Shown: positions 5,081-48,887, counted from the first letter of the stretch. The stretch: DNA of 64,000 nucleotides from Azolla caroliniana (GCA_043228905.1 JBHGNT010000003.1:14632001-14696000), one strand, 5' to 3'. Numbers and translations are program-made. The notes: generated by a model not told the origin, from the sequence alone.

Positions 5081-7158
5081 CTCACTGTTATATCATCAAT
5101 GCTTTCCTCGCTCCCTCGGATCCTCTACCCCTTTCGACCCTTGGTGGCGTACAATCTATCGTCCGCAAGGCAGGGCGCATATCACCATATGATCTCGTCT
5201 GAGTGCACTAGTGGGTATTCCCGCCCATACGCGGACGAAGTTCATTGCAACCCAAGTATTGGCGACGAAATCGGGCCTCATTTTCGACATTCGGGTTCAT
5301 GCTCCGAACGAGTTGCACTATCGATGCTTCCAACACCAGCTTGTAGTTGTAGTATAGTGGTGAGTATTCCCGCCTCACGTGGGGGACCCAGGTTCAATCC
5401 CCGGCAACGGCGCGAAGGCCGACACGAATCTTATGCCATCTCCTAGGGCATTGTCGCCTAGGATCCCTCACCGCCATATAATCAATACAATCCTCGCTCC
5501 CCCGGATCCTCTACCCATTTCGAGACCTTCGGGGTACAATCGGTCATCCGCGAGGCAGGGCGCACATCACCATATGATCTCGTCTGAGTGCGCTCGTGGG
5601 TATTCTCAATCCGAACATGTTGTACAATCGATATTTCCAACAGAAGGATGTCGTTGTAGCATAATGGTGAGTACTCCCGCCTGTCACACAGGTGACCTCG
5701 GTTCGTTCCTCGGATTCGATGTCATCTCCAACGGAATGGGCGCCTTGGATCCTGCATCGCCATATACTCAATGCTCCCCCGGTTCCTCTATGCCTTTCGA
5801 GCCCTTGTGGGGTATAGTCGGTCGTCCACGAAGCAGGGCGCATATAACCACATGAACTCATCCGAGTGAACTCGTAGGTATTCCCGCCCCTAAGCAGACG
5901 AATTTTGTTTCAACCCGTAAACTAGCGACGAGAGCGGGCCTCGTTTTCTACATTCGGGTCCATGCTTTGAACGAGTTATACGATCGATACTTCCAATACG
6001 AGGCTGTCATTGTAGTATAGTGGTGAGTATTCCCGCCTATCACGCGGGTGACTGGAGTTCGATCCCCGACAACGGCACGAAGGGCGGGACAAATCCGATG
6101 TCATCTCCTACAGAACGGACGCCTTGGATACCGCATCGCCATATCCACAATGCTTTCTTCACTCCCCCGGATCCTCTACCCTTTCCGAGCCCTTGCGGGG
6201 TACTATGGGTCGTCCGCAAGGCAAGGCACATATCACCATATGAACTCGTTCGACAACACTCATATGTATTCCCACCCTTAAGCGGACGAATTTCCCTTCA
6301 ACCCGTGTACTGGCGACGAAAACGGGCCTTGTTTTCTACATTCGGGTCCATGCTCTGAACCAGTTATACGATCAATCCTTCCAATACGAGGACGTCGTTG
6401 TAGTCTAGTGGTGAGTACTCTCGCTTGTCATGTGGGCGACCCGGGTTCGATTAGCGTCAAGGGTGGGAAGGGTTGGCCGAATATGATGTCATCTCCTACG
6501 GAACGGGCACCTTGGAACCCACATCGCCATATCCTCAATGCTTTCCTCGCTTCTCTGGATCCTCTACGCCTCTCTAACCCTTATGGGGAACTCTCGGTCA
6601 TCCAAGAGGCAGGGCGCATATCACCATATGAACTAATCCGAGTACACTCGTGGGTATGCCTGCCCATAAGCGAGCGAATTTCGTTTCAACCCGTAAACTG
6701 GCGACAAAACCGGGCCTTCTTTTCTACATTCGGGTCCATGCTCTGAACGAGTTATACGATTAATACATCTGAACACGAGGATGTCGTTGTAGTATAGCGG
6801 TGAGTATTCCCGCCTGTCACGTAGGCGACCCGGGTTTCATTCCCAACAACGGGGCGAATGGGATGTCATATCCTACGGAACGGGCGCCTTGGATCCCGCA
6901 CCGCCATATCCTCAATGCTTGCCTCGCTCCCCCAGATCCTCTACCCCTTTCGAGTCCTTCCAGGGTAGAGTCCGTCGTCCGCGAGGAAAGGCGCATATCA
7001 CCATATGATGTCGTGTGAGTGCACTCGTGGCTATTCCCGCCCATAAGCGGGCAAATTTTGTTGCGACCCGTGTACTGGCGACGAAACCTTGCCTCTTTTT
7101 CGATATTTGGGTCCATGCTCCGAACGAGTAACTCGATCGATACTTCCAACACGAGGCT

Positions 7159-10100
7159 GTCGTTGTAGTATAGTGGTGAGTATTCCCGCCTGTCACGCGG
7201 GCGACCCGGGTTCGATCCTCTCCAATGGCATGAAGGGCGGGGCAAATCCGATGTCATGTCCTACGGAACGGTCGCTTGGGATCCCGCACCACCATATCCT
7301 CAATGCTAGCCTCGCTCCCCCGGATCCTCTACCCCTTTCGAGTCCTTCCAGGGTAGAGTCTGTCGTCCGCGAGGAAAGGCGCATATCACCATATGATGTC
7401 GTGTGAGTGCACTCGTGGGTATTCCCGCCCATAAGCAGGCAAATTTCGTTGCGACCCGTGTACTGGCGACGAAACCTTGCCTCTTTTTCGATATTTGGGT
7501 CCATGCTCCGAACGAGTAACTCGATCGATACTTCCAACACGAGGCTGTCATTGTAGTATAGTGGTGAGTATTCCCGCCTATCACGCGGGCGACCCGGGTT
7601 CGACCCTCTCCAATGGCATGAAGGGCGGGGCAAATCCGATGTCATGTCCTACGGAACGGTCGCTTGGGATCCCGCACCGCCATATCCTCAATGCTTGCCT
7701 CGCTCCCCCGGATCCTCTACCCCTTTCGGACCGTTCCGGGGTAGAGTCGGTCGTCCACGAGGAAAGGCCCATATCACCATATGATGTCGTCTGAGTGCAC
7801 TCGTGGGTATTCCCGCCCATAAGTGGGCAAATTTCGTTGCGACCCATGTACTGGCGACGAAACCTTGCCTCTTTTTCGATATTTGGGTCCATGCTCCGAA
7901 CGAGTAACTCGATCGATACTTCCAACACGAGGCTGTCGTTGTAGTATAGTGGTGAGTATTCCCGCTTGTCACGCGGGCGACCCGGGTTCGATCCTCTCCA
8001 ATGGCATGAAGGGCGGGGCAAATCCGATGTCATGTCCTACGGAACGGTCGCTTGGGATCCCGCACCACCATATCCTCAATGCTAGCCTCGCTCCCCCGGA
8101 TCCTCTACCCCTTTCGAGTCCTTCCAGGGTAGAGTCTGTCGTCCGCGAGGAAAGGCGCATATCACCATATGATGTCGTGTGAGTGCACTCGTGGGTATTC
8201 CCGCCCATAAGCAGGCAAATTTCGTTGCGACCCGTGTACTGGCGACGAAACCTTGCCTCTTTTTCGATATTTGGGTCCATGCTCCGAACGAGTAACTCGA
8301 TCGATACTTCCAACACGAGGCTGTCATTGTAGTATAGTGGTCAGTATTCCCGCCTGTCACGCAGGCGACCCGGGTTCGATCCTCTCCAATGGCATGAAGG
8401 GCGGGGCAAATCCGATGTCATGTCCTACGGAACGGTCGCTTGGGATCCCGCACCGCCATATCCTCAATGCTTGCCTCGCTCCCCCGGATCCTCTACCCCT
8501 TTCGGACCGTTCCGGGGTAGAGTCGGTCGTCCACGAGGAAAGGCCCATATCACCATATGATGTCGTCTGAGTGCACTCGTGGGTATTCCCGCCCATAAGT
8601 GGGCAAATTTCGTTGCGACCCCTGTACTGGCGACAAAACCTTGCCTCTTTTTCGATATTTGGGTCCATGCTCCGAACGAGTAACTCGATCGATACTTCCA
8701 ACACGAGGCTGTCGTTGTAGTATAGTGGTGAGTATTCCCGCCTGTCACGCGGGCGACCCGGGTTCGATCCTCTCCAATGGCATGAAGGGCGGGGCAAATC
8801 CGATGTCATGTCCTACGGAACGGTCGCTTGGGATCCCGCACCACCATATCCTCAATGCTAGCCTCGCTCCCCCGGATCCTCTACCCCTTTCGAGTCCTTC
8901 CAGGGTAGAGTCCGTCGTCCGCGAGGAAAGGCGCATATCACCATATGATGTCGTGTGAGTGCAGTCGTGGGTATTCCCGCCCATAAGCAGGCAAATTTCG
9001 TTGCGACCCGTGTACTGGCGACGAAACCTTGCCTCTTTTTCGATATTTGGGTCCATGCTCCGAACGAGTAACTCGATCGATACTTCCAACACGAGGCTGT
9101 CATTGTAGTATAGTGGTCAGTATTCCCGCCTGTCACGCGGGCGACCCGGGTTCGATCCTCTCCAATGGCATGAAGGGCGGGGCAAAGCCGATGTCATGTC
9201 CTACGGAACGGTCGCTTGGGATCCCGCACCGCCATATCCTCAATGCTTGCCTCGCTCCCCCGGATCCTCTACCCCTTTCGGACCGTTCCGGGGTAGAGTC
9301 GGTCGTCCACGAGGAAAGGCCCATATCACCATATGATGTCGTCTGAGTGCACTCGTGGGTATTCCCGCCCATAAGTGGGCAAATTTCGTTGCGACCCATG
9401 TACTGGCGACGAAACCTTGCCTCTTTTTCGATATTTGGGTCCATGCTCCGAACGAGTAACTCGATCGATACTTCCAACACGAGGCTGTCGTTGTAGTATA
9501 GTGGTGAGTATTCCCGCCTGTCACGCGGGCGACCCGGGTTCGATCCTCTCCAATGGCATGAAGGGCGGGGCAAATCCGATGTCATGTCCTACGGAATGGT
9601 CGCTTGGGATCCCGCACCACCATATCCTCAATGCTAGCCTCGCTCCCCCGGATCCTCTACCCCTTTCGAGTCCTTCCAGGGTAGAGTCCGTCGTCCGCGA
9701 GGAAAGGCGCATATCACCATATGATGTCGTGTGAGTGCACTCGTGGGTATTCCCGCCCATAAGCAGGCAAATTTCATTGCGACCCGTGTACTGGCGACGA
9801 AACCTTGCCTCTTTTTCGATATTTGGGTCCATGCTCCGAACGAGTAACTCGATCGATACTTCCAACACGAGGCTGTCATTGTAGTATAGTGGTGAGTATT
9901 CCCGCCTGTCACGCGGGCGACCCGGGTTCGATCCTCTCCAATGGCATGAAGGGCGGGGCAAATCCGATGTCATGTCCTACGGAACGGTCGCTTGGGATCC
10001 CGCACCGCCATATCCTCAATGCTTGCCTCGCTCCCCCGGATCCTCTACCCCTTTCGGACCGTTCCGGGGTAGAGTCGGTCGTCCACGAGGAAAGGCCCAT

Positions 10101-10262
10101 ATCACCATATGATGTCGTCTGAGTGCACTCGTGGGTATTCCCGCCCATAAGCAGTTGAATTTCGTGGTGACCCATGTCCTGGCGACGAAACCTTGGCTCG
10201 TTTTCGACATTCGGGTGTATGCTCTGAACTAGTAACTCGATCGAAACTTCCAACACAAGGAT
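7159..10262 (+). repeat. 776-bp dimeric higher-order repeat (4 A/B pairs) of tRNA-Asp pseudogene units
   Basis: Diagnostic variants alternate: GTCGTTG vs GTCATTG, and CGAGTCCTTCCAGGG vs CGGACCGTTCCGGGG. All 8 tRNAs have T-stem 3' strand CTCTC instead of CCCGG. Confidence 0.95.
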
Positions 10263-10340
10263 GTCGTTGTAGTATAGCGGTGAGTATTCCCGCCTGTCAC
10301 GCGAGCGACCCGGGTTCGATCCCCGACAACGGCGCGAAGG

Positions 10341-10910
10341 ACAGCGCGGATGGGAAACGGTATGAGGAGTACCCGGCTACGGAGAGCCGGATGATACAGG
10401 CCCGGTGTGATCCGGATGAGGAGTACCCGGCTACGGAGAGCCAGATGATACAGGCCCGGTGTGAACTGGAGGAAGAGACATATTCGTAAATATGTTTCTG
10501 AGAGCCCATCGAGGCTATATTTGTAAATAGCCGAAAAGTCATATTAGTATAAATATGACTTAGGGCAAACTTTTAGTATCTGTTGTCATTTTCTGTTTTG
10601 CACGAAATCAGAGTGTGTAACTGTACTGAGAGAGAGAGAGAGAGATCGAGCTTGTTGCCTCTGTTGTAACCGCCGCGTGTGGCGAAGATCTTTGAGCACG
10701 AGGTCGTTGCCTCAGTGAACTCACTATTGTACATTCTCACATAGTGACAGTTTGCAGACCGTGGGCTGCCGTGGTTTTTTCCCCTAGTTTGGGGTTTTCC
10801 ACGTAAACCTCCTGTGTATGTTTCTCATCTTTGTGTCGAGTTTTATTTCCCGTTTTTCTGTGTATCTTTCTACCCTCGGTTGTGGCCGAGCGTCGCGCAT
10901 AAGGAACGTC
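10341..10910 (+). mobile_element. Terminus-less LTR fragment related to the Copia G LTR, inserted in the array
   Basis: Shares GCCCATYGAGGCTATATTTGTAWATAGCC, ATATTAGTATAAATATGAC, (GA)n and CTCGGTTGTGGC with LTR 57016-57591. Has an internal 54-bp duplication (10362/10416). Confidence 0.8.
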
Positions 10911-11259
10911 GGGGCAAATAGGATGTCATATCCTACGAAACCGGCGCCTTGGATCCCGCACCGCCATATCCTCAATGTTTTTCTCGTTCCCCCGGATCCT
11001 GTACTCCTTTCGATCCGTTCCAGGGTAGAGTCGGTCGTCACGAGGCAAGGCGCATATCACCATATGATGTCGTCCGAGTGCACTCGTGGGTATTCCCACC
11101 CATAAGCGGGCGAATTTCGGTGCGAACCGTGGACTAGCGACGGAACCTTGCCTCGTTTTCGACATTCGGGTCCATGCTCCGAACGAGTAACTCGATCGAT
11201 GCTTCCAACACGAGGATGTTGTTGTATGATAGTGGTCAGTATTCCCGCCTGTCACGCAG

Positions 11260-11918
11260 TGTCGCGTTGTTACGCGTGTGCGTATAGAACGAGGCGGGAC
11301 CGTGGGGGTCTTGGACTGAGGAATAACCGATCAGGAGTAGGTGCCAGAAAGACAACGGTCGTGCTTCCACACACACACATAGATACACAGAAACCGCGAT
11401 CGAGTGAAACAAGACAAATGTGTGTATGTGTATAAATATATCAGACAAAAAGGGGGTTATAACCGGTGGGCTGGTGAGCAAGACTCTCTCACGAGCACGT
11501 ACACGCACACACACAAAAGAGCGAGATGGAGACCCTGCTGGAAGCACACTTGTGTTCCGCGGAGCAGAGTCAGCCTCTCAAAACCTTACACAGACAAAGA
11601 CCGCGAAAGCTAGAGGAGCAGAGCTCAATCTCTAGTCCGGTAGCACTTCGTCCTCCCCAAAAGCGATCCCCTCTACGATTCCTCTCCCTCTCTTTTATAT
11701 CCCAAGGAGGGAGGCCCTTACATCATCTTTATTCTCTCTCCTTTCGGACAGAGATACATCTCGATTTTCTACCTAACCAATGCATGTTGTCCAGGATATT
11801 TATATCAGCTGCCTTGTACTTATTTATATATATTACAACAAAACTTGTGCCCGCGTGTTAGGGCCGGTTCGTGCACATTATTCTCCAACTCCGCCTAGGG
11901 ACAGTTTTCTTCACGATA
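11260..11918 (-). mobile_element. Solo LTR of the Gypsy A/B/F family inserted in the anticodon arm of a tRNA-Asp copy
   Basis: Reverse complement starts TATCGTGAAGAAAAC and ends TAACAACGCGACA. The tRNA 5' part lies at 11218-11259 and the 3' part from 11919. Degenerate 4-bp TSD GCAG/GCTA. Confidence 0.88.
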
Positions 11919-14900
11919 GCTAGAAACCCGGGTTCAATCCCCTGCAACGGCGCGAAGGGCAGGGCGAATCCGATGTCATGTCCTATGGAACAGTCGCCTG
12001 GGATACCGCACCGCCATATCCTCAATGCTTTCCTCGCTCCCCCTGATCCTCTACCCCTTCCAAAGTAGAGTTGGTTGTCCACAAGGCAGGGTGCATATCA
12101 CCATATGATGTCTCCTGAGTGTACTCGTGGGTATTCTTGCCCTTAAGCATGCGAATTTCGTTGTGACCTGTGTAGTGGCGATGAAACCTTGCCCAGTTTT
12201 CGACATTCGGGTCCATGCTCTGAACTAGTAACTCGATCGAAACTTTCAACACGAGGATGTCGTTGTAGTATAGTGGTCAGTATTTCCGCCTGTCACGCAG
12301 ACGACCCGGGTTTGATCCCCGACAACGGCGTGAAGGGCGGGGCGAATAGAATGCCATATCCTATGGAACGTGCGCCTTGGATCCCGCACCGCCATATCCT
12401 CAATGCTTTTCTCGCTCTTCCGGATCCTCTACGCCTTTTGAGCCATTCCTGGGTAGAGTCGGTTGTCCACGAGGCAAGGCGCATATCACCATATGATGTC
12501 GTCTGAGTGCACTTGTGGGTATTTTCGACATTTTGGTCCATTCTCCAAATGATTTATACGATCGATAGTTCCAATATGAGGAGTATAGTGCCGAGTGTTT
12601 TCGGGTGTCACTTAGGTGACCTGGGTTCAATCCCCGGCAAGGTCGCGGAGGGCACGTCGAATACGATGTCATCTCCTACAGAACTCGCGCCTTGGATCCC
12701 CCATCGCCATATCCTCAATGCTTTCCTCGCTCCCCTGGATCCTGTACCCCTTTCGAGCCCTTACGGGGTAAATTCAGTAGTCTGCGAGGCAGGGTGCATA
12801 TAGCCATTTGATCTCGTCCTAGTGCACTTGTGGGTATACCCGCCCAAAATCAGGCGAATTTCGTTGCGAACCTTGTACTGGTGAGGAAACCGGACTTCGT
12901 TTTCAACATTCGGCTCCATGCTCCGAATGAGTTATATGATCGATAGTATCAATACAAGGATGTTGTTCTAGTATAGTGGTGAGTATTCCCGGGTGTCACA
13001 TGGGTGACCCAGGTTCGATCCCCGGCAAGGGCGCGAAGGGCACGGCGAATCCGATGTCATCTCCTACGGAAATGGCACGTTGGATCCCGCATTGCTATAT
13101 CCTCAATGCTTTCCACGATCCTCCGGATGGTCTACTCATTTCGAGCCCTTGCAAGGTATTGTCGGTCGTCCGTGATGCAGGCCGCATATCATAGTACGGC
13201 ACTTGTGGGTATTTCCGCCCTTAAGCAAATTAATTTCGTTTCAACCCATGTATTGGAAATGAAACAGATTCTCTTTTTCGACGTTTGGTTGAATGCTCCG
13301 AACGAGTTATACGATCGATACTTCCAATACGAGGATGTCGTTGTAGTAAAGTGGTGAGTATTCCCCACTGTAACGCGAGTGTCCCGGGTTTGATCCCCGG
13401 CAATGGCGCAAAGGGCCAGGCGAATCCGATGTCATGTCTTACGGAACGGTCGCTTGGGATCCCCCACCACCATAACCTCAATGCTTTCCTCACTCCCCCG
13501 GATCCTCTACCCCTTTGGAGCCCTTCCGGAGTAGAGTTGGTTGTCCACATGGCCGGGTGCATCTCACCATATGATGTCGCCTGAGTGCACTCGTGGGTAT
13601 TCCCGCCCATAAGCAGGCAAATTTCGTTGTGACCCGTGTAGTGGCGATGAAACCTTGCCTAGTTCTCGACATTCGGGTCCATGCTCCGAACTAGTAACTC
13701 GATCGAAACTTCCAACACGAGGATGTCGTTGTAGTATAGTGGTGAGTATTCCCGCCTGTCACGCGGGCGACCCGGGTTTGATCCCCACGAACGGCGTGAA
13801 GGGCGGGGCGAATAGAATGTCATATCCTACGGAACGCGCGCCTTGGATCCCGCACCACCATATCCTCAATGCTTTTCTCGCTCCCCCGGATTCTCTACGC
13901 CTTTTGAGCCGTTCCGGGGTAGAGTCGGTTGTCCACGAGGCAAGGCGCATATCACCATATGATGTCGTTCGAGTGCACTCGTGGGTATTCTCACCCTTAA
14001 CCGGATGAATTTCGTTTCAACCTATGTATTGGAAACAAAACAGAGTCTCTTTTTCGACATTCGGTTGAATGCTCCGAACGAGTTATACGATTGATACTTC
14101 CAATACGAGGATGTCGTTGTGGTAAAATGTTGAGTATTCCCCCCTGTGACGCAGGTGTCCCGGGTTTGATCCCTGGCAATGGCGCAAAGGGCGGGGCAAA
14201 TCCAATGTCATCTCTTACGGAATGGTCGCCTTGAATACCGCATGGCCATATCGTCAATGCTTTGCTCGATCCCCCGGATTCTCTACGTCATTCGAGCCCT
14301 TGCGGGGTACTGTCGGTCGTCCACGAGGAAGGGCACATATCACCATATGAACTCATTCAAGTGCACTCGTATGTATTTCCTCCCATAAGTGCACGAGTTT
14401 CGTTTCAGCTCGTCCATTGGTGAGTATTCTCGCCTATCATGCGGGTGACCCGTGTTCGATCCCCAGCAATGGCGCGAAGGGAGGGGCAAAGCCATAGTCA
14501 TCTCCGACGGAATGGGTGCGTTCGATCCCGCATCGGCGTATCCTCAATGCTTTCCATGCCCCCCCAGATCCCCTACCTCGTCCGAGCCCTGGATAGGTAT
14601 TATCAGTCGTTCACGAGGCAAGGTGCATACCACCATATGCACTGATTCGACTGCACTCGTAGGTATTCCCGTCCTTAAACGAATGAATTTCGTTTCCGTC
14701 CTGTCATGCCGGTTACCCGGGTTCCATCCCCGGCAACGACGCGAAGGGTGGGGTGAAATCCGATGTCATCTCCTATGGCATGGGCACCTTGGATCCCGCA
14801 ACGCCATATCCTGAATGCTTTCCTCACTCCCCCGGATCCTTTACACCTTTCGAACCCTTGCGGGGTAATGTCGGTCGTCTGCGAGGCAGGGCGCGTATCA

Positions 14901-17170
14901 CCATATGATGTCGTCTGAGTGCACTCGTGGGTATTCTCGCCCATAAGCAAGTGAATTTCGTTTTGACTCGTGTACTAGCGACGAAACAGGGCCTCGTTTT
15001 CTACTTTCGGCTCCATGCTCCGAACGAGTTATACGATCGATAGTTCCAGTACGAGGATGTCGTTGTAGTATAGTGGTGAGTATTCCCCGATGTCACGCGG
15101 GTGATCCGGGTTCGATCCCCGGCAAGGTCACGGAGGGCGCGGCAAATCCGATGTCATCTCCTACGGAACCGACGCCTTGGATCCCGCATCGCCATATCCT
15201 CAATGCTTTCCTCGCTCCCCCGGAACCTCTACCCCCTTTCGAGCCCTTGCGGGGTAGAGTCGGTCATTCGCGAGGGAGAGCGCATATCACCATTTGAACT
15301 AGTGCGTATACCCGTCCAAAATCGGCTGAATTTTGTTGCGAACCGTGTATTGGTGACGAAACCGGGTTTCATTTTTGACATTCGGGTCCATGCTCCGAAC
15401 GAGTTATACGATCGACACTTCCAATACGATGATGTCGTTGTAGTATAGTGGTGAGTATTCCCGCCTCACACACGGGTTACCCAGGTTTCATCCCCGGCAA
15501 AGGCGCGAAGGGCGGGGCAAATCTGATGTCATCTCCTACAAAACGAGCACCTTCAATCCCGCATCGCCATATCCTCGATACTTTCCTCGCTCCCCCGGAT
15601 CCTCTACCACTTCCGATCCCTTGCGGGGTACTATTGGTCGTCCGGGAGGCATGTCGAATTTCACCATATGAACTCGTTCCAGTGCACTCGTGGGAATTCC
15701 CGCCACCCCTAAGTGGACAAATTGCGTTTCCTACATTTGGGTCCATGCTCCGAATGAGTTATACGATGGATAGTTCTAACATGAAGATGTCGTTGTAGTA
15801 TAGTGGAGAGTGTTCCCGCCTGTCACGTGGGTGAGCCGGGTTTGATACCCTGCAACGGTGCGAAGGGCGGGGAGAATCTGTTGTCATCTCCCACGGAACG
15901 GTCGCCTAGGATACCACATCACCATATCCTCAATGCTTTCATCACTCCCCCAGATCCTCTTCCCTTTTCGAGACCATACGAGGTAGATTCTTTCGTCCGC
16001 GAGGTAGGGCGCATATCACAATATGATGTCGTCCGAGAGCACTCGTGGGTATTCCCGCCCAAGCGGACGAATTTCGTTTTGACCCGTGAACTAGCCTCGA
16101 GACCTTGCCTCGTTTTCGAAATTCGATGTCATCTCTTACGGAACGAGTGCCTTGGATCCCGCACCGACATATCCACAATTCTTTCCTCGCTCCCCCTGAT
16201 TCTCTACTCCTTTTGAGCCCTTGCGGAGTACTATCGGTCCTCCACGGGGCAGGGAGCATATCACCATATACATTCGTGGGATATTCCTGCCCTTAAGCAG
16301 ACTATTTTCGTTTCAACCCGTGTACTGGCGACGAAAGCAGGCCTTGTTTTCTGAAATCGAGTCCATGCTTTGAACGAGTTATACGATTGATAGTTCCAAT
16401 ACGAGGACGTCATTGACCTATAGTGGTGAGTATTCCCGCTTGTCACGCGAATGGTGGGGCGAATCCGATGTCATCTCGTACGGAACGGGTGCCTTGGATC
16501 TTGCACCGACATATCCTAAATACTTTCCTCCCTCCCCCGGATCCCCTACACATTTCATGACAATCGATACTTCCAATAGGAGGATGTTGTTGTAGTATAG
16601 TGGTGAGTATTCCCGCTTGTCACGTGGGTGACCTGGGTTCGATCCCCGGCAATGGTGCTAATGGCGGGGCGAATATGATGTCATCTCCTAGGGAACGGGT
16701 GACTTGGATCCCGCACCGACATATCCTCAATGCTTTCCTCGCTCCCCCCGGATTCCCTACGCCTTTTGAGCCATTGTGAGTACTATCGGTCCTCCATGAG
16801 GCAGGGAGCATATCACCATATGCATTCGTGGGATATTCCCGCCCTTAAGCGGACTATTTTTGTTTGAACCCGTGTACTGGCGACGAAAGTGGGGCTTGCT
16901 TTCTATATTCGAGTCGATGCTTTGAACGAGTTATACGATTGATAGTTCCAATAAGAGGATGTCCTTGTAGTATAGTGGTGAGTATTCCCGCTTGTCACGC
17001 AGGTGACCCGAATTCGATCCCTGGCAACTGCGCGAATGGCGGGGCGAATCCAATGTCATCTCCTACATAACGGGTGCCTTGGATCCCCCACCGAAATATC
17101 CTCATTGTTTTCCTTGCTTCCCCGGATCCCCTACGCCTTTCGAGTCAATCGATAGTTCCAATACGAGCAT

Positions 17171-17242
17171 GTCGTTGTAGTATAGTGGTGAGTATTCCCG
17201 CTTGTCACGCGGGTGACCCGGGTTCGATCCCCGGCATTGGCG
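17171..17242 (+). tRNA. tRNA-Asp(GUC), near-intact (one acceptor-stem mismatch)
   Basis: Full 72-nt cloverleaf. The 3' acceptor strand CATTGGC gives a T5.T mismatch. Confidence 0.55.
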
Positions 17243-18739
17243 CGAATGTCGGGGCGAAACCGATGTCATCTCCTACGGAACGGGTGTCTTGGATCACGCA
17301 CCGACATATCCTGAATGTTTTACTCGCTCCAGTGGTTCCCCTACGCCTTTCGAGCCAATCGATACTTCCAATGCGAGGATGTCATTGTAGTATAGTGGTG
17401 AGGATTCCCGCTTGTCACGCGGGTGACCCGGGTTCGATCCCCGGCAACGGCGCGAATGGTGGGGCGAATCCGATGTCATCTCCTACAGAATGGGTGGCTT
17501 GGATCCCCCACCGACATATCCTGAATGTTTTCCTCGCTCCCCCGGATCCCGTATGCCTTTCGAGCCAATCGATACTTCCAATACGAGGATGTCATTGTAG
17601 TATGGTGGTGCGTATTCCTGCTTGTCACGCGGGTGACCCGGGTTCGATCCCCGGCAACGGGGCGAAACCGATATCATCTCCTACGGAACGGGTGCCTTGG
17701 ATCCCGCACCGACATATCCTGAATGCTTTCCTCGGTCCCCCGGATCCCCTACGCCTTTCGATCCCTTGTGGGTATAATCGGGTGACCCGGGTTCGATCCC
17801 CGGCAACGGCACGAATGGCGGGGCGAATGCGACGTCATCTCGTACGGAACGGGTGCCTTGGATCCCGCACCGACATATCTTGAATAAATTCCCCGCTCCC
17901 TTGGATCCCGTACGCCTTCGACCACATCGATACTTCCAATACGAGGATGTCGTTGTAGTATAGTGGTGAGTATTCCCGCTTGTCACGCGACTGACCCGGG
18001 TTCGATCCCCGGCAACGGCACGAATGGCGGTTACCGGGGCGAATATGATGTCATCTCCTATGGAACGGGTGCCTTGGTTCCGCACCGACATATCCTCAAT
18101 TCTTTCCTCGCTGCCCCTGATTCTCTACTCCTTTTGAGCCCTTGCGGGTACTATCGGTCCTCCACGAGGAAGGGAGAATACCACCATATGCATTCGTGGG
18201 ATATTCCCGCCCTTAATTTCATTTCAACCGGTGTACTAGCGAGGAAACCAGGGCTTAGATTCTAGATTCGATTCCATGCTTTGAATTAGTTATACGATTC
18301 ATAGTTCCAATACGAGGATGTCGTTGTAGTATAGTGGTGAGTATTCCCGCTTGTCACGCGGGTGACCCGGGTTCGATCCCCGGAAACGGCGCGAAGGGCG
18401 GGGCGAATCTGATGTCATCTCCTACGGAACGGGTGCCTTGGAATGCGCACCGACATATCCTGAATGTTGTCCTCGCTCCCTCGGATCCCCTACGCCTTTC
18501 GAGCCAATCGATACTTCCAATGCGAGGATGTCATTGTAGTATGGTGGTGAGAATTCCCGCTTGTCACGCTCGTGACCCGGGTTCGATCCCCGGCGACGGC
18601 GCGAATGGCGGAGCGAATCCGATGTCATCTCCTACGGAACAGTTGCCATGGATCCCGCACCCACATATCCTGAATGTTTTCCTCGCTCCGCCGGTTCCCC
18701 TACTCCTTTCCAACCAATCGATACTTCCAATACGAGGAT

Positions 18740-18811
18740 GTCGTTGTAGTATAGTGGTGAGTATTCCCGCTTGTCACGCGGGTGACCCGGGTTCGATCCC
18801 CGGCGACGGCA
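18740..18811 (+). tRNA. tRNA-Asp(GUC) with fully paired stems but discriminator A instead of G
   Basis: All stems pair (G-U allowed) and the anticodon is GTC. The final base is A. Confidence 0.6.
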
Positions 18812-19844
18812 CTAATGGCGGGGCGAATCCGATGTCATCTCCTACCGGACGGGTGCCTTGGATCCCGCACCGACATATCATCAATGTTTTCCTCGGTCCC
18901 CCCGATCCCCTACACCTTTTGAGGCCATCGATACTTCCAATATGAGGATGTCCTTGTAGTGTAGTGGTGAGTATTTCCCCTAATCACGCGGGTGACCCGG
19001 GTTCGATCCCCGCCAGCGACGCGAATGGCGGAGCGAATCTGATATCATCTCAGATAGTACGGGTGCCTTGGATCCCGCACCGACATATCCTCAATGCTTT
19101 TCTTGCTCCCCTGGAGCTTTGTTACGACCTTTGATGTCGTTGTAGTATAGTGGTGAGTATTTCCCCTAATCACGCGAGTGACCCAGGTTCGATCCCCGCC
19201 AGCGACGCGAATGGCGGAGCGAATCTGATGTCATCTCGGATAGTACGGGTGTCTTGGATCCCGCACCGACATATCCTCAATGCTTTTCTTGCTCCCCTGG
19301 ATTTGCTACGACCTTTGAGGCCTTGTGGGATACTATTGGTCCTCCACAGGGCAAGGAGCATATCACCATATGCATTCGTGGGATATTTCCGCCCTTAAGC
19401 GGACTAATTTCGTTTCAACCCGTGTACTAGAGACGAAATCAGGCCTTGTTTTTACATTCGAGTCCATGCTTTGAATAAGTTATAGGATTCATAGATCCAA
19501 TACAAGGATGTCGTTGTAGTATAGTGGTGAGGATTCCCGCTTGTCACGCGGGTGACCCGAGTTCGATCCCTGGCAACGGCGTGAAGGGCGGGGCGAATCC
19601 GATATCATCTCCTACGGATGGGGGCCTTGTATCCCGCACTGATATATCTTGAATGCTTTCCTCCCTCCCCCGGATCCCCTACGCCTTTTGAGCCCATCGA
19701 TACTTCCAAAACGAGGATGTCGTTGATGAACATATGCATTCGTGGCATATTCCCACCCCTAAGCAGACAAAATTCGTTTCAACCCTGGCGACGAAAACAA
19801 GGTTTTCGACATTCGATTCCATGCTTTGAATGAGTTATACAATT

Positions 19845-19916
19845 GTCGTTGTAGTATAGTGGTGAGTATTCCCGCTTGTCACGCGGGTGACCCGGGTTCG
19901 ATCCCCGGCAATGGCG
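19845..19916 (+). tRNA. tRNA-Asp(GUC), foldable (G4-U wobble); upstream flank partly deleted
   Basis: 72-nt cloverleaf with intact A and B boxes. Confidence 0.7.
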
Positions 19917-21648
19917 CGAATGGCGGGACGAATCCCATGTCATCGTGTATGGAAATAGTGCCCTTGATCCCACACCCACATATCCTCAATGTTTTCCTCG
20001 GTCCCCCGAATCCCTTATGCCTTTGGAGCCATTCAATATTTCCAATACGAGGATGTCGTTGTAGTATAGTGGTGAGTATTCGCTTGTCACGCGGGTGACG
20101 CAGGTTCGATCCCCGGCGACGGCGCGAATCGGATGTCATCTCCTACGGAACGGGTGCCTTGGATCCCGCACCGACATATCCTGAATGTTTTCCTCGCTCC
20201 CCCGGATCCCCTACGCCTTTCGAGCCCTTGCGGGGTACTATCAGTCCTCCACGGGGCAGGGAGCATATCACCATATGCATTCGTGGGATATTCCCGCCCT
20301 TAAGCGGACTAATTTTGTTTCAACCCGTGTACTGGCGATGAAAAGGGGCTACATTTGAGTCAATGCTTTGAACGATTTATATGATGGATAGTTCAAATAC
20401 GAGGATGTTGTTGTAGTATAGTGGTGAGTATTCCCGCTTGTCACGCGGGTGACCTGGGTTCGATCCCCGACAACGGTGCGAATGGCGGGGCGAATCCGAT
20501 GTCATCTCGTACAGAACGGGTGCCTTTCATCCCGCACCGACATATTCTGGATGGTTTCCTCGCTCCCCTGGATCCCCCACGCCTTTCGAGCCCATCGATG
20601 AGAAGAAACTCTCATGTTCGATTCTGATGAAATTGCTTCTAGCACTACGAGGATGTTGTTGTAGTATAGTGGTGAGTATTCCCGCTTGTCACGCGGCTGA
20701 CCTAGGTTCGATCCCCGACAATGGTGCTAATGGCGGGGCGTATACGATGTTATCTCCTATGGAATGGGTGACTTGTATCCCGCACCGACATATCCTCAAT
20801 GCTTTCCTCGCTCCCCCGGATTCCTTACACCTTTTGAGCCCTTGCCCGGATTCCTTACACCTTTTGAGCCCTTGCGGGTACTAGTGGTGAGTATTCCCAG
20901 TTGTCACGTGGGTGACCCGGGTTCAATCCCTAGCAATGGCGCTAATGTTGGTTGCCGTGGCGAATACGATGTCATCTCCTACGGAATGGGTGCCTTGGAT
21001 CCCGCACTGACATATCCTCATTGTTTTCCTCGCTCCCCAGATCCCCTACGCCTTTCCAACCAATCGATATTTCCAATACGAGGATGTCGTTGTAGTATAG
21101 TGGTGAGTATTCCCGCTTGTCAGTTTATGACCCGGGTTCGATCCCCAGCAACGGCGCGAATCCGTTGTCATCTCCTACAGAACGACTGCCTTGGATCCCG
21201 CACCGACATATCCTCATTGTTTTCCTTGCTCCACGGGATGCCCTACGCCTTTCAAGCCAATCGATACTTACAATACGAGGATTTCATTGTAGTATAGTGG
21301 TGAGTATTCCCGCTTGTCACGCGGGTGACCCAGGTGACATCCCCGACAATGTCGGGAATGGCGGGGCGAATCCGATGTCATCTCTTATAGAATGGGTGCC
21401 TTGGATCCCTCACCGACATATCCTCCTCGCTCCCCCAGATTCCCTACGCCTTTTGAGCCCTTGCGGAGTAGTATCGGTCCTCCACGGGGCAGGGAGCATA
21501 TCACCATATACATTCGTGGGATATTCCCACCCTTCAGCAGACTAATTTCGTTTCAACCCGTGTACTGGCGACGTAAGCGGGTCTTGTTTTCTACATTCGA
21601 GTCCATGCTTTTAATGAGTTATACGGTTGATAATTCCAATACAAGGAT

Positions 21649-21720
21649 GTCGTTGTAGTATAGTGGTTAGTATTCCCGCTTGTCACGCGGGTGACCCGGG
21701 TTCGATCCCCGGCAACGGCG
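21649..21720 (+). tRNA. tRNA-Asp(GUC), intact
   Basis: GTCGTTGTAGTATAGTGGTTAGTATTCCCGCTTGTCACGCGGGTGACCCGGGTTCGATCCCCGGCAACGGCG: all stems pair, discriminator G, upstream TTATA (~-30) and CAA (~-12) retained. Confidence 0.85.
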
Positions 21721-22193
21721 CGAATGGTGGGTCAAAGCCGATGTCATCTCCTACCGGACGGGTGCCTTGCCACGCTTCCCCGGATCCCCTACACAATCGC
21801 TACATCCAATACGAGGATGTCGTTGTAGTATAGTGGTGAGTATTCCCGCTTGTCACGCGGGTGACCCGGGTTCGATCCCCGGAAACGACGTGAATGGAGG
21901 GGTGAATCTGATGTCATCTCGTACGGAATGGGTGCCTTGGATCTTGCACCGACATATCCTCAATGCTTTTCTCCCTCCCCCGGATTTCCTACGACTTTTG
22001 AGCCCTTGCGGGGTACTATCGGTCCTCCACGGGGCAAGGAGCATATCACCATATGCATTCGTGGGATATTCTCATCCTTAAGCGGACTAATTTCGTTTCA
22101 ACCCGTGTACTGGAGACGAAAGCAGGCCTTGTTTTCTACATTCGAGTCCATTCTTTGAATAAGTTATACAATTGATAATTCCAATACAAGGAT

Positions 22194-22265
22194 GTCGTTG
22201 TAGTATAGTGGTGAGCATTCCCGCTTGTCACGTGGGTGACCCGGGTTCGATCCCTGGCAACGGCG
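22194..22265 (+). tRNA. tRNA-Asp(GUC), near-intact/likely pseudogene
   Basis: One D-stem mismatch plus two new G-U wobbles. Confidence 0.45.
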
Positions 22266-23478
22266 TGAATGGCGGGGCGAATCCGATGTCATCTCCTACG
22301 GAACGGGTGCCTTGGATCCCGCACTGATATATCCTGAATGCATTCCCGCTTGTCACGCGGGTGACCCGGGTTCGATCCCCGGCAACGGTGCGAAGGGCTA
22401 GGGCTAATGCATTGTCATCTCCTACGAAATGGAAGGCGCCTTGGATTGTGCATCACCATATCCCTTTCGAGCGCTTCCGGGGTAGAGTCGGTCGTCCGTG
22501 AGGCAGGGTGCATATCACCATATGATGTCGGCCGAACTTGTGGGTATTCCCTCCCATAAGCGGGCGAATTTAGTTGCGACCCGTTTACTGGCGACGAAAA
22601 CTTGCCTCGTTTTCGACATTCGGGTCCATGCTCCGAACAAGTAACTAGATCAATACTTCCAACATGAGGATGTAGTTCTAGTATAGTGGTGAGTATTCGC
22701 GCTTGTCACGGGGGTGACCCGTGGTTGATCCCTGGCAACGGTGCGAAGGGCGGGTTGAATCCGATGTCATCTCCTACGGAACGGGCGCCTTGTATCCCGC
22801 ACTGCCATATAGGGGGTTTATATAATTCATCCAATGTAACGGTTACATGACTGTTATAAATAAGGCTGTTACTTGTAGGCATGATCATAATTGTGCATGT
22901 ATCTATTAACATACTCATCCTCACACAGTCATTTAGTTTACACATACACATCAACCACATCATTACACATACCCTTATGCCTCCCTGTATATTCTTACGG
23001 GTAATACATGGCACGCCTGTGGGACTGTGTATCGCATGGTGAACCAATTTTCCATGGCAACTTTTCTCGATCGGAACTCCATCGGTTATCTCGACGGTCA
23101 GAAATCCCTTGAGAGGATCACTACTCTACGATCGATAACTTTGATCGGAGCTTTGCTTGACTCGAACCTTCTTGTTCGGTTAGCACAAGTCGTGATTGGA
23201 TGATACACCAATCAGCTAGTTCAATGTGGCATGGGTCATGAAATGTGTTGTGGGGCTTGTATATTCTCTAGTTTATTCATGTGAGTTGGGTTTTATGTTT
23301 TATACACCTTGGTCTTTCGAATTTTTACCCTCAGGTTTTTGTTTTTTTATTTTTATTTTTTTTTCTTTTTCTGGCCCTTGAGTTTTCAAAATTCTGCATT
23401 CTGCTGTCCACTTTTTGAAATCTCACGTCATGCCCTTGAGCTTTTGAAATTTCCCCTTCATACCCCACTTCTCTCTCT

Positions 23479-33358: not shown

Positions 33359-34908
33359 AGATCACGCTCCACCCGTATCGGAATGCCGATCTCCACGTGC
33401 CGTGTCCGTCCTCAGCCTTCCCACAGGCCGTCTCCCATCTGACTTCGCTGGCATCGTGCCAGGACTCCTCGGTACCGCCATCCATCTCCTCGGTCTTACA
33501 TGGGCATACGGGCCCGAATGCCGAGTTCTCCGGAATCGGGTCCGTGGGCTTTCGTCCGCTCCTTCCCCGTATCGTCTCGCCGGTGATTCTTGGCCCTCCG
33601 CCGCCGCCTTCCTCCGCTTGGGACTCACGTGGGTACTCGGGCCCGACTGCCATCGTCTTGGGAGTAAGTGTGGGAAGACACAAAGAATCACCCGTCCGTT
33701 TTACGCCCTTGTCCGTAGCCACCGACTCTTCGTGGTCGGCGGTCGTCTTCTTACCGATCACGCAAGCCCCGTCTGGGCTTGCTTCTCCAATGACCGGGAT
33801 CTCGGGCTGACATGCCCGAACCGCTGGTCCCAACGTCCCGGTTCCTCGATCGGTATCTCGGCCTCCTCCTTGGCCGTTCTCTCTCCGCAAGTCGAGAGGG
33901 CGTTTCGTTCCGCACCCTCTTCCGTGGTACCGTGGTACCATTCTCTTTCGGCCTCCTCATCCTCCGATCGCCTCCGGCCCGACTCCATTATAAGCCCTTC
34001 TTCAACTTCGATTTTCCCATTTTCCTCGAGCATCGCTTTGAGAGCTTCGTACGCCTCTGCAATCCTGGCCCCTACGCCGACCCTTGCCAACTCTCTTTGC
34101 CGTTCGGCCTCTTCCCGCTGTGATGGCATGCCGTCGCGTGCCTTCCTCTTAGCCTTCTCGGCTCGCTCTTTGTCTAGCCTTTGGCACACCCTTCCGACCT
34201 TCAACCAGTCCTCCGTAAGCCCATTCGCTCCATCATTGTCTTCGAGCTCAATCCCGATGGCTTCCCGTTCCACCCGGTCGATCGACCTGACGAACAAAAG
34301 GACTTTGTCCGCCCCCACCAAACCTTGTTCCCGCTCTGGGAGCCGAGCAAGTCATCGCTCGAACTCCCGGAATGCCTTCGTTGCACCCCGGTGGGTCTTT
34401 GCCGATGCTACCCACTGGTCGAAGTGGTGTCATCCCCGACTCTTCCGCCGTCCTCCGTATGCCTTCAGGGGCGCCTCTTCGAAGGCCTCCCATGAACCAC
34501 GAGCCTCACGAAGCTCCATTACTTCCGCATGCATCCGGACGGCTACGACCCGACAGAGGAACTCCAGCCTCAACGCCTCGTCTACGCCAGGCTCTTCCAT
34601 TTCCGCGTTGTAGGCTTCCAAGTAAGATGGGACTTTGTCCCCGTTGAAACGGTCGACTCTTTCGACCACTCGCCCAACCGCTTGTTGCGCTGCTTCTCGC
34701 CTCATCACCACTCGTGCCGACTCCAACACCACTTTGGCCACCATCTCCGCAAGGTCGTCGTCGGGTTCACCAAAGATGTCGCGTTGTTACGCGCATGCGT
34801 GGAGAAAGGCGGGACCACGGGGGTCTTGGACTAGGGAGCGATGGAGCGTAGGAAGTCGTGCTTCACGGCTTCTGGGGCATCTCAGAAACACACCGGAAGC
34901 AACCGATA
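33359..34908 (-). mobile_element. Gypsy 'J' (relative of A/B/F): shortened 5' LTR 34777-34908, tRNA-Trp PBS, degenerate gag
   Basis: Minus strand reads ...TAACAACGCGACA-TCTT-TGGTGAACCCGACG. The gag-like VDRFNGDKVPSYLEAYNAEM and VLLFVRSID are homologous to B gag. Confidence 0.85.
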
Positions 34909-35315
34909 GCGGGAAACCCGGGTTTGAATCCCTGCAACGGCGCGAAGGGCGGGGCAAATCCGATGTCATGTCCTACGGAACAGTCGCCTGGGATACCGCA
35001 CCGCCATATCCTCAATGCTTTCCTCGCTCCCCCGGATCCTCTACCCCTTCCAGAGGAGAGTTGGTTGTCCACGAGGCAGGGTGCATATCACCATATGATG
35101 TCTCCTAAGTGTACTCGTGGGTATTCCCGCCCATAAGCATGCGAATTTCGTTGTGACCCGTGTAGTGGCGATGAAACCTTGCCCAGTTTTCGACATTCGG
35201 GTCCATGCTCTGAACTAGTAACTCGATCGAAACTTCCAACACGAGGATGTCGTTGTAGTATAGTGGTCAGTATTTCCGCCTGTCACGCAGGCGACCCGGG
35301 TTTGATCCCCGACAA
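34909..35315 (+). repeat. Displaced single tRNA-Asp array unit, a duplicate of 11919-12325
   Basis: Shares private variants with that unit: GAAACCCGG, a deletion in the CCCTTCC..AGAG hairpin, GATGTCTCCT and GTCAGTATTTCCGCC. Confidence 0.9.
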
Positions 35316-35344
35316 TGAAGTGATGCCGACAACAATTCCAGCCC

Positions 35345-41757: not shown

Positions 41758-41789
<32 letters not shown>

Positions 41790-41858
41790 GCTCCTCGGTT
41801 CAAGACCCCCGTGGTCCCGCCCCCTTCTACACGCACTCGCGTAACAACACGACATATT

Positions 41859-41876
41859 TGGTGAACCCGACGTGAA
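41859..41876 (+). promoter_or_regulatory. Primer-binding site complementary to the plant tRNA-Trp 3' end
   Basis: Reverse complement of ...TTCACGTCGGGTTCA-CCA, the 3' end of plant cytosolic tRNA-Trp as I recall it. Confidence 0.85.
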
Positions 41877-47380: not shown

Positions 47381-48887
47381 GGCCGGATTTCTTCGGTATC
47401 TACCCATCTCTGGCACATGCTGGTGGATGCGTGGTTTGGTGGGGGTGGATGTCGTGAAGAAAACCGGCCATAGGCGGAATCGAAGAAAAAGGCGCATGAA
47501 CCGGTTCTTACACGGGTGGACGCGAGGATTGATATATTGTACATAACTTGTAATTAGGGCGACTGGTGTAAATACTAGGTAGTGCACATTTATTAGGGGA
47601 TTTTGTGCGTATCTCTGTCGACAGGGACAGGGAATAAAGCAGTTTGGCTGAGGAAAAGGGGCATGCCTTTTGGGAACTATTTAAGGAGGGAGAGAAGGAA
47701 GGAACGGGGATCGCGCGCTAGGGAGGACGAACTGCTGCTGCAGACCAGAGTGCCGAGCTCTCTTTTCTCCTCCGATCGTCGGTCTCTGTGGGTCGGGAGT
47801 TCGCTGCCTCTGCTTCGTGGACAGCCCATGCACTTCCAGCAGAGGCTCTCCCCCTTTGTTTTGTTTCTGGGAGTCGAGCGAGTGTTGTCTGTGTGTGTGA
47901 GTAGGATCCCCGTGTCGGGTCCATCGCCGCCTTGTCGGTTGTAACCGTCAGAGTTGTATTCTCTTGTAACCTCTTGTATTCTCTTGTTATTGTAATCTCT
48001 TGTTATTGAAATCAAGTGTTACGTTCTATATCTCCCCTTCTTGTTCCGCGTATCTACAAATCTCTCTCGCTCTCTCTCTTTCTCTCTCGCTCCTTGGTTC
48101 AAGACCCCTGTGGTCCCGCCCCCTTCTACACGCACGCGCGTAACAACGCGACAACGCCGCCGATCACCGATCCACGTCCGGATATGCATTCTCTCTTGGG
48201 AGTGTTGCGATAGCATGGAGCAGTAAGAAGCAGCCGATAGTTGCATTGTCGAGGACCGAAGCTGAGTATAAAGAAGCGGATGTCGCGACATGCAAAGCCA
48301 TATGGTTGAACCGGCTACTTAAGGATCTGCAGGTGCAGTTGTCCGATCCAACGGCTATCTACTGCGACAACCTCAGCAACATCCAACTCACCAAGGTGTG
48401 GAGCCAAGAGAAACTGGAGTGGTGATCCGGAAGATCCCGAAGAGCCTCAAGTTGAGCTTGAGGGGGAGTGTTGAGAGACAAGCTCAACATCGGCCGGATC
48501 AATTGAGCAAGCCGAGGACCGGATCGGTTGGGACCGATCAGTTGGAAACCGGTACGCAGACCAATGCGTAGGAAGGCCGGATCGGTGCGGAAACTGGGAG
48601 GCCATCGGAAAGATATTCCACAAGGAATATATTTGGGAGTTAGTGTAGGGGCTCCTCAATGAGCATTGAAGTACTGTCAGTACTTCTGTTAGTCTGAAAA
48701 GGACTTGTATAAAAGTGATCCTTGAACACACACGATGTACAGATCGAGTATCATTTTTTGAGTTAAGTTCTTGTGGTTACTCTCTCTCTGTCTCTCCCAT
48801 GCGTACTTTGCAAACCGAAGCTTTCCATTAAACCTGCGTTTTCTGTTGTTCGGTTTCCTATATTGCTTCCGCACGCCATTCTTTTCA

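What the first reader, a model, noticed from the sequence alone, without database searches (positions are those of the whole stretch)
7783..7876. Hidden 'ghost' tRNA-Asp in every spacer: the 388-bp monomer is an ancient tRNA dimer ending in a Pol III terminator
Seen: 239 bp after each tRNA start, GATGTCGTctgAGTgcAcTcGTGgGTATTCCCGCC aligns without gaps to GATGTCGTtgtAGTatAgTgGTGaGTATTCCCGCC (27/35 identical). The match continues through the anticodon stem (CCCGC-CCATAA-GCGGG in several units) and on to GGCG-(A)CGAA. In these units the only T4-5 run lies ~15 nt after the ghost, not after the recognisable tRNA. Inference: the founding unit was a two-tRNA Pol III transcription unit whose second gene diverged before amplification. 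The array therefore has nested levels: tRNA dimer, 388 bp, 776 bp.
Basis: partly seen in the sequence, partly recalled or inferred. Interest (0 to 1): 0.85.

Follow-up and report, generated by a model that had tools for sequence, protein, structure and literature searches.

The report
Decayed second tRNA-Asp in satellite unit
Each roughly 388-base unit of this plant tRNA-Asp tandem repeat holds a second, badly decayed copy of the same tRNA gene, a real but now functionless fossil showing that the repeat began as a pair of tRNA genes.

Summary
A 71-nt segment (here 7786-7856) starts 239 bp after each tRNA-Asp copy and 149 bp before the next. It runs end to end alongside the 72-nt tRNA.

- **Significance:** the tRNA consensus picks this segment as its best match in the whole spacer. 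Only 1-4 of 3000 dinucleotide shuffles score as high.
- **Independent model:** a covariance model built only from the array's tRNA copies finds the ghosts over its full length. The best scores 19.6 bits, E about 7e-4 in 64 kb.
- **Not a tRNA:** the general Rfam tRNA model and ARAGORN do not see it. It has a 6-nt anticodon loop, a broken T arm and a damaged B box.
- **Age:** the ghost occurs in every unit type that keeps consensus positions 186-362, and in a metagenome contig carrying a variant of the satellite. It therefore predates amplification.
- **No constraint:** it now drifts at the spacer's rate and has been deleted several times.

A single co-transcribed Pol III unit is only compatible with the T-run layout and is untested. 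Earlier work in this scan found the same tRNA-Asp satellite on other pieces of this genome. This is an ordinary molecular fossil of modest interest.

The parts
7786..7856 (+). Ghost: 71-nt decayed tRNA-Asp copy. The D stem and anticodon stem are kept. The anticodon loop is 6 nt, the T arm is broken and the B box is damaged.
   Evidence: (16.4 bits, E 0.008)
7872..7876 (+). T5 run 15 nt after the ghost. It is the only run of four or more T in this 388-bp unit, and is probably the old terminator of the ghost gene.
7547..7618 (+). Recognisable tRNA-Asp-derived copy 239 bp upstream of the ghost. It is itself a pseudogene, with anticodon ATC and a broken T stem.
   Evidence: (36.8 bits)
7935..8006 (+). 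Next tRNA copy, 149 bp after the ghost start.
8950..9020 (+). Best-scoring ghost copy. It aligns end to end with the tRNA model, with one deletion in the anticodon loop.
   Evidence: 19.6 bits
13576..13646 (+). Ghost copy in a diverged 388-bp unit.
   Evidence: 17.4 bits
7159..10262 (+). Homogeneous block of eight 388-bp units arranged as a 776-bp two-unit higher-order repeat. Every unit carries a tRNA pseudogene, a ghost and a T4-5 run.
5194..22743 (+). Whole tRNA-Asp satellite array. My motif classification gave 46 tRNA-derived and 36 ghost copies in 5-23 kb plus 35.0-35.4 kb. Units are 388, 375, 355, 210, 197, 186 and 170 bp long.
16961..17800 (+). Block of 210-bp units that lack the ghost. 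All share one deletion junction that removes unit-consensus positions 186-362.
18320..19135 (+). Second block of ghost-less units (three of 210 bp, then one of 186 bp). The 210-bp units have the same deletion junction.
14352..14474 (+). Ghost joined directly to a tRNA body, so the shared motif lies 51 bp apart instead of 149 bp. This is a deletion chimera.
34855..35320 (+). Detached unit 12 kb from the array: tRNA remnant, full spacer with ghost at 35100-35170, then a further tRNA copy.
   Evidence: spacer 84% identical over 316 bp

Best explanation
The ghost is the decayed second member of an old pair of tRNA-Asp(GTC) genes that lay about 240 bp apart in the same orientation. The steps below are inferred from the sequence.

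1. A tRNA-Asp gene was duplicated locally, or two copies happened to lie side by side.
2. The downstream copy lost function. It lost one base of the anticodon loop, lost T-stem pairing, and took changes in the B box that Pol III factors need. It kept the T run 15 nt behind it, which fits an old terminator.
3. Only then was the roughly 388-bp segment holding both copies amplified head to tail into a satellite, presumably by unequal exchange.
4. Later events removed the ghost wholly (one 177-bp deletion gave the 210-bp units) or partly (several independent deletions of about 13 bp gave the 375-bp units). A block of units with broken tRNAs was re-amplified as a 776-bp higher-order repeat.

Today the ghost does nothing detectable. 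It drifts at the same rate as the spacer around it.
For: Homology:
- Full-length collinear similarity beyond chance (0/5000 shuffles; 1-4 of 3000 against the whole spacer).
- The family-specific covariance model matches ghosts across model positions 1-72.
- The 3' part alone is also above chance, 118/5000.

Specific to tRNA-Asp rather than tRNA-like in general:
- The general Rfam tRNA model gives nothing at E up to 10, even in a 131-nt search.

Predates amplification:
- The position is the same (149 bp before a tRNA) and the derived changes are shared in 36 copies across all unit types, in the detached unit at 35.1 kb, and in metagenome contig L001.
- Ghost consensus against tRNA consensus is 71% identical (JC distance 0.37). 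Drift since amplification is about 0.14 per lineage.

No present constraint:
- Pairwise identity among diverged units is 0.773 in the ghost, 0.767-0.776 in the adjacent spacer and 0.815 in the tRNA-proximal spacer (unit 73-150), against 0.837 in the tRNA.
- There are independent deletions inside the ghost, and the units with the best tRNAs lack it or carry a truncated version.
Against: - Individual ghost copies score only 11-20 bits, little above the best background hit of 13.4 bits. Because the copies descend from one ancestor, they count as a single event.
- The flanks of ghost and tRNA show no similarity, so a whole-unit duplication cannot be told apart from two independently placed genes or a patch copy.
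- The 3' half is only moderately significant on its own.
- The dating assumes the tRNA partner stayed unchanged and that rates were neutral.
Confidence: 0.8

Rival explanations
1. The founder was one Pol III transcription unit in which the first tRNA had no terminator of its own and was co-transcribed with the second tRNA up to the T run behind it. The array units may still give a transcript of about 330 nt headed by a tRNA.
For: In most 388-389-bp units, and in contig L001, the first run of four or more T downstream of the tRNA is the one 12-15 nt after the ghost. Clustered Arabidopsis tRNA genes normally keep a T run close behind each gene (PMC7544208, read). Its absence after the recognisable tRNA here is therefore unusual.
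Against: - No RNA data could be obtained.
- The spacer between the two bodies is 167 bp. By my own knowledge of the yeast tRNA-Arg/tRNA-Asp and fission-yeast tRNA-Ser/tRNA-Met pairs, known dimeric tRNA genes are separated by about ten bases or fewer.
- Many diverged units and the 210-bp units have a T4 at +148 or +178.
- Absence of a T4 in 167 nt is close to even odds by chance (my estimate).
- The T run is no better conserved than its neighbours (profile).
Confidence: 0.12
2. Only the 5' half (acceptor, D arm and anticodon stem, about 43 nt) is copied from the tRNA, for example by a short conversion or template-switch patch into an unrelated spacer. The 3' half resemblance is chance.
For: Most of the signal lies in the 5' part (z = 5.7, against 2.4 for the 3' part). 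The T arm has almost no pairing left.
Against: - The 3' part, tested at the position fixed by collinearity, still beats 97.6% of shuffles, and 99.4% with the 14-nt trailer included.
- Overall length is kept at 71 nt against 72 nt.
- The segment ends in the same four bases as the tRNA.
- The covariance model aligns it end to end.
Confidence: 0.06
3. Chance resemblance between a GC-rich spacer and the tRNA.
For: The general tRNA model sees nothing. Single-copy scores are modest.
Against: Shuffle controls give about 1 in 1000 for the whole spacer and 0/5000 for the collinear alignment. The model E-value is 7e-4. The length, both ends and the following T run also agree.
Confidence: 0.02

Closest known systems
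Arabidopsis chromosome 1 tRNA-Ser/Tyr/Tyr cluster and other silent plant tRNA gene clusters (tRNA-Pro, tRNA-Cys, maize tRNA-Ile)
   Same: Head-to-tail amplification of a short unit carrying tRNA genes. A repeat unit can hold more than one tRNA gene. The clusters sit in heterochromatin, and pseudogenes occur among the copies (PMC7544208, PMC11700998, PMC10701932).
   Different: In those clusters the genes of a unit are different, intact tRNAs, each with its own T run. Here the second gene is a paralogue of the first. It decayed before amplification, generic tRNA finders cannot see it, and the first gene has no T run nearby.
Twin SINE of Culex pipiens, proposed to derive from a dimeric tRNA precursor (Feschotte et al. 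2001, cited in PMC3531059)
   Same: A repeated element made of two tRNA-related parts separated by a spacer, traced back to a pair of tRNA genes.
   Different: Twin is interspersed and spread by retroposition. This element is strictly tandem, shows no sign of retroposition, and its second half is much more decayed.
Dimeric tRNA genes of yeasts (tRNA-Arg/tRNA-Asp in budding yeast, tRNA-Ser/tRNA-Met in fission yeast; from my own knowledge, not checked here)
   Same: Two tRNA bodies in one orientation, with the terminator only after the second.
   Different: The spacer is about 10 nt or less in yeasts, against 167 nt here. Both yeast genes are functional and co-transcription has been demonstrated. 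Neither holds here.
Satellites whose monomer is an old dimer, with higher-order repeats built on top
   Same: Nested periodicities: an old internal duplication, the monomer, and a two-monomer higher-order repeat.
   Different: Only the 71-nt tRNA body shows internal homology. The rest of the two halves (239 and 149 bp) shows no detectable similarity.

Membership tests
Functional tRNA gene (the ghost) | Recognised by general tRNA models (Rfam RF00005 at 29 bits or more; ARAGORN) | tested here: not met
   No RF00005 match at E up to 10 in the 18-kb search or in a 131-nt search. ARAGORN lists no gene at any ghost.
Functional tRNA gene (the ghost) | Cloverleaf with a 7-nt anticodon loop and a paired T stem and acceptor stem | tested here: not met
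   The loop is 6 nt. In typical copies the T stem keeps about 3 of 5 pairs (two of them wobble pairs) and the acceptor about 4 of 7. The D stem keeps 4/4 and the anticodon stem 4-5/5.
tRNA-Asp-derived pseudogene (paralogue of the array's tRNA) | Significant, collinear, full-length sequence similarity to tRNA-Asp | tested here: met
Dimeric (co-transcribed) tRNA gene | Terminator only after the second tRNA body | tested here: inconclusive
   True for most 388-389-bp units and for L001. Other units have a T4 at +148 or +178, and the pattern is not unlikely by chance.
Dimeric (co-transcribed) tRNA gene | A single precursor RNA spanning both bodies | not testable with these tools
Dimeric (co-transcribed) tRNA gene | Very short spacer between the two bodies | tested here: not met
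   167 bp between the end of the tRNA and the start of the ghost.
SINE | Interspersed, non-tandem copies with a tail and target-site duplications (definition in PMC3531059) | tested here: not met
   Copies are strictly head to tail. The only copy outside the array is a detached array unit.
Tandem tRNA gene array / tRNA-derived satellite | Head-to-tail repeats of a unit carrying a tRNA gene | tested here: met

The most novel reading that the evidence does not exclude
The tRNA, its 167-nt spacer and the ghost are still transcribed by Pol III as one RNA of about 330 nt that ends at the T run. The half-kept tRNA-like fold of the ghost (D arm, anticodon stem and paired ends) would then serve as a processing or small-RNA-generating signal, for example feeding silencing of the satellite.
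Probability: 0.05. Interest if true: 0.55.

Novelty: new member of a known kind. Interest (0 to 1): 0.25.

Why it matters
It records the history of a large plant satellite. The repeat was born from a pair of tRNA-Asp genes, one of which was already dead when amplification began. This gives a relative clock: the ghost had drifted about 0.37 changes per site before amplification, against about 0.14 since. It also shows that generic tRNA finders miss such relics, while a model built from the neighbouring copies finds them. It does not reveal a new kind of gene or mechanism.

Tried and rejected
- **Rfam tRNA model on the spacer:** no hit, both in an 18-kb search and in a 131-nt search at E up to 10.
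- **A third tRNA-like piece around +95 in the spacer:** not above shuffles, 2406/3000.
- **Homology of the flanks:** upstream 60 nt, downstream 60 nt, and the whole of spacer A against spacer B are all no better than shuffles.
- **Origin of the spacer from the retrotransposons in the window:** local blastn of the spacer against the rest of the window found only the detached array unit at 34943-35248.
- **tRNA-Asp-like segments in the LTRs of this window:** no hit of the R1 model outside the array below E 0.07.
- **Structure-preserving changes as a sign of past selection.**
  - The two D-stem changes are transitions that would keep pairing in any case.
  - A 6-bp closing helix in a register shifted by 3 nt averages 5.1 of 6 pairs across copies. 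It is explained by the triplet-repeat nature of the two ends, and one apparent compensation is a ghost/tRNA chimera.
  - My cloverleaf energy evaluation failed because of a mistyped structure string and is not used.
  - The later model searches covered only 8900-9060 and 13540-13690.
  - The local blastn used the spacer only.
- **Less-decayed dimers elsewhere:** the one metagenome scan gave a single contig (L001). Its unit is 82% identical to the window's consensus, and its ghosts are more decayed, not less.
- **Literature:** the paper searches found no description of a tRNA-Asp satellite with an internal decayed tRNA.

Full report
**What is there**

The window carries a head-to-tail array of units derived from a tRNA-Asp(GTC) gene between about 5.2 and 22.7 kb. 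I call the gene plant-type from my own recollection of the Arabidopsis sequence; earlier notes of this scan also call the genome a plant. ARAGORN finds 34 tRNA-like genes. Tandem Repeats Finder reports periods of 388, 375, 355, 290, 210, 197 and 186 bp. The Rfam tRNA model finds about 40 copies scoring 21 to 60 bits.

The copies of the homogeneous 388-bp block (7159-10262) are themselves pseudogenes. Their T stem is broken and they score only 35-40 bits.

**The observation**

A 10-base motif shared by the tRNA and the spacer occurs alternately at spacings of 239 and 149 bp through the array. The spacer copy near the finding starts at 7786, 239 bp after the tRNA start at 7547, and ends at 7856.

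It gives 25/35 against the neighbouring copy.
- The segment is 71 nt against 72 nt for the tRNA. It begins with the same five bases and ends with the same four.
- A T5 run lies at 7872-7876, 15 nt behind it.

**Is it more than chance?**

I built consensus sequences from 46 tRNA copies, 36 ghost copies and 14 diverged whole units.

- Local alignment of the tRNA consensus to the whole 315-nt spacer consensus picks the ghost (unit positions 240-309) as the top hit. Under three scoring schemes only 1, 4 and 4 of 3000 dinucleotide-preserving shuffles of the spacer reach that score.
- Global alignment of tRNA to ghost beats all 5000 shuffles (z = 5.5).
- The 5' part (positions 1-43) carries most of the signal. 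The 3' part (44-72), tested at the place fixed by collinearity, is still reached by only 118 of 5000 shuffles, and by 30 of 5000 with the 14-nt trailer included.

As an independent method I built a covariance model from 34 array tRNA copies only, using the cloverleaf as structure, and scanned the whole window without filters.

- Ghost copies match over model positions 1-72 at 11-19.6 bits.
- The best is 8950-9020 with E = 7e-4 for 64 kb on both strands. The finding's own copy, 7786-7859, scores 16.4 bits with E = 0.008.
- The best hit outside the array scores 13.4 bits.
- The printed alignments show one deletion in the anticodon loop and otherwise end-to-end collinearity.

**What it is not**

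The general tRNA model of Rfam reports nothing at a ghost, even at E up to 10 in a 131-nt search. ARAGORN calls none. Counting cloverleaf pairs over 22 full-length ghost copies gives:

| Element | Pairs kept |
|---|---|
| D stem | 78/88 cells |
| Anticodon stem | 77/110 cells (5/5 in the best-kept copies) |
| Acceptor stem | 75/154 cells |
| T stem | 55/110 cells |

The anticodon loop has six bases. The B-box region has lost its spacing and a conserved G. That reading rests on my comparison with the tRNA consensus and on general knowledge of Pol III promoters.

The likeness is thus a sequence likeness to this particular tRNA. It is paralogy, not a general tRNA-like fold.

**How old, and is it constrained?**

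The ghost sits in the same place and carries the same derived changes in three settings:

- every unit type that retains consensus positions 186-362;
- the detached unit at 34.9-35.3 kb;
- a metagenome contig, L001, found with a ghost-specific pattern.

The L001 unit is 82% identical to the window consensus. Its ghosts lie about 226-240 bp after a tRNA, each followed by a T4. L001 falls within the divergence range of the window's own units, so it may come from the same or a close species. It is not proof of a sister-species copy.

Ghost consensus against tRNA consensus is 49/69 identical (JC distance 0.37). Diverged units differ pairwise by about 0.27, that is about 0.14 per lineage. The ghost had therefore already decayed substantially before amplification.

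Among diverged units, mean pairwise identity is 0.773 in the ghost. It is 0.767 and 0.776 in the flanking spacer parts and 0.837 in the tRNA. There is no sign of present constraint.

Loss of the ghost points the same way:

- The 210-bp units all share one junction that removes positions 186-362, which takes out both the ghost and the T run.
- The 375-bp units carry at least three different deletions inside the 5' half of the ghost.
- The best-preserved tRNA copies (100 bits or more with my model) sit in units without a ghost or with a truncated one.

**How far does the duplication reach?**

Beyond the tRNA body I found no similarity. The 60 nt upstream, the 60 nt downstream and the whole of spacer A against spacer B are all no better than shuffles. 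There is no third tRNA-like piece either.

This fits an old whole-segment duplication whose neutral flanks have diverged on both sides beyond recognition. In that case expected identity is about 46% if the ghost lineage alone accounts for the ghost-to-tRNA distance (my calculation). It equally fits two separately placed genes.

**The Pol III claim**

In most 388-389-bp units and in L001, the first run of four or more T after the tRNA is the one behind the ghost. That is compatible with a terminator inherited from the ghost gene. By my estimate there is about an 8% chance of a T4 falling within 25 nt of the ghost end, which is mild support for the ghost once having been a complete gene.

It does not show co-transcription, for these reasons:

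- Most 210-bp units and several diverged units have a T4 at +148 or +178.
- Absence of a T4 over 167 nt is near even odds by chance.
- The spacer between the two bodies is far longer than in known dimeric tRNA genes.
- The T run is no better conserved than its surroundings.

By contrast, clustered Arabidopsis tRNA genes keep T runs close behind each gene (PMC7544208), so this array is atypical in that respect.

RNA evidence could not be obtained. 

**Comparison with what is known**

Tandem tRNA gene clusters are well known in plants. Examples are the Arabidopsis Ser/Tyr/Tyr, Pro and Cys clusters and the maize Ile cluster (PMC7544208, PMC11700998, PMC10701932). tRNA-Asp(GTC) is reported as the most numerous tRNA gene in many plant genomes (PMC12652284).

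Earlier follow-ups of this scan found the same tRNA-Asp satellite, with units of about 350-378 bp, on four other pieces of this genome. As far as the notes shown to me go, none mentions the ghost.

An element made of two tRNA-related halves and traced to a tRNA pair has a precedent in the Twin SINE of Culex (cited in PMC3531059). That element is interspersed, not tandem. My paper searches found no description of a tRNA-Asp satellite with an internal decayed tRNA.

**Verdict**

The ghost is real and is best read as a decayed tRNA-Asp paralogue that predates the amplification of the unit. The nested periodicity (tRNA pair, 388 bp, 776 bp) is correct as a description of history; units two apart are 98.4% identical against 94.8% for neighbours. 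The co-transcribed two-tRNA Pol III unit remains an untested possibility. This is a neat piece of satellite history inside a known kind of repeat, and of modest interest.

Noticed in passing
window 5343-5413, 6006-6078, 7546-7619, 15434-15506, 17949-18021: Some array copies are called tRNA-SeC(tca), Asp(atc), Val(cac) or Thr(tgt) by ARAGORN. These are tRNA-Asp copies with mutated anticodon loops, not genes for other amino acids.
   Followed up: partly
window 14352-14474 and 14642-14741: There are two chimeras in which a ghost is joined directly to part of a tRNA body, so the shared motif lies 51 bp apart instead of 149 bp. They look like deletions between the two related segments and lie in the stretch with a 290-bp period.
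   Followed up: partly
window 34855-35320: One complete satellite unit (tRNA remnant, spacer with ghost, tRNA) lies 12 kb from the array, beyond retrotransposon-like sequence. It is probably the far end of the array, split off by insertions.
   Followed up: partly
window 10362-10464: A 54-bp tandem repeat (1.9 copies, 97% matches) sits right after the last 388-bp unit, where the regular array breaks off until about 11.0 kb.
   Followed up: no
window 29682-29760, 41779-41860, 48078-48150 (+) and about 34740-34850 (-): A recurring motif (a T-loop-like stretch followed by GTGGTCCCGCC, and a little further on TGGTGAA) appears in four places in the retrotransposon part of the window. It may belong to the LTR and primer-binding-site features that other notes of this scan mention for this genome.
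   Followed up: no
window 7159-10262: Within the array, the first 20 nt of the tRNA copies are much better conserved (pairwise 0.93-0.94) than the rest of the tRNA and the spacer (0.71-0.88). Conversion from dispersed tRNA-Asp genes or a mutational bias could explain this. It was not resolved.
   Followed up: no
L001 1-1914 (minus strand): Metagenome contig ERZ1034427 NODE-5853 carries four tRNA-Asp copies, one of them perfect (106.5 bits with my model), among decayed units of the same satellite. In one unit the tRNA has been deleted between two ghosts.
   Followed up: partly
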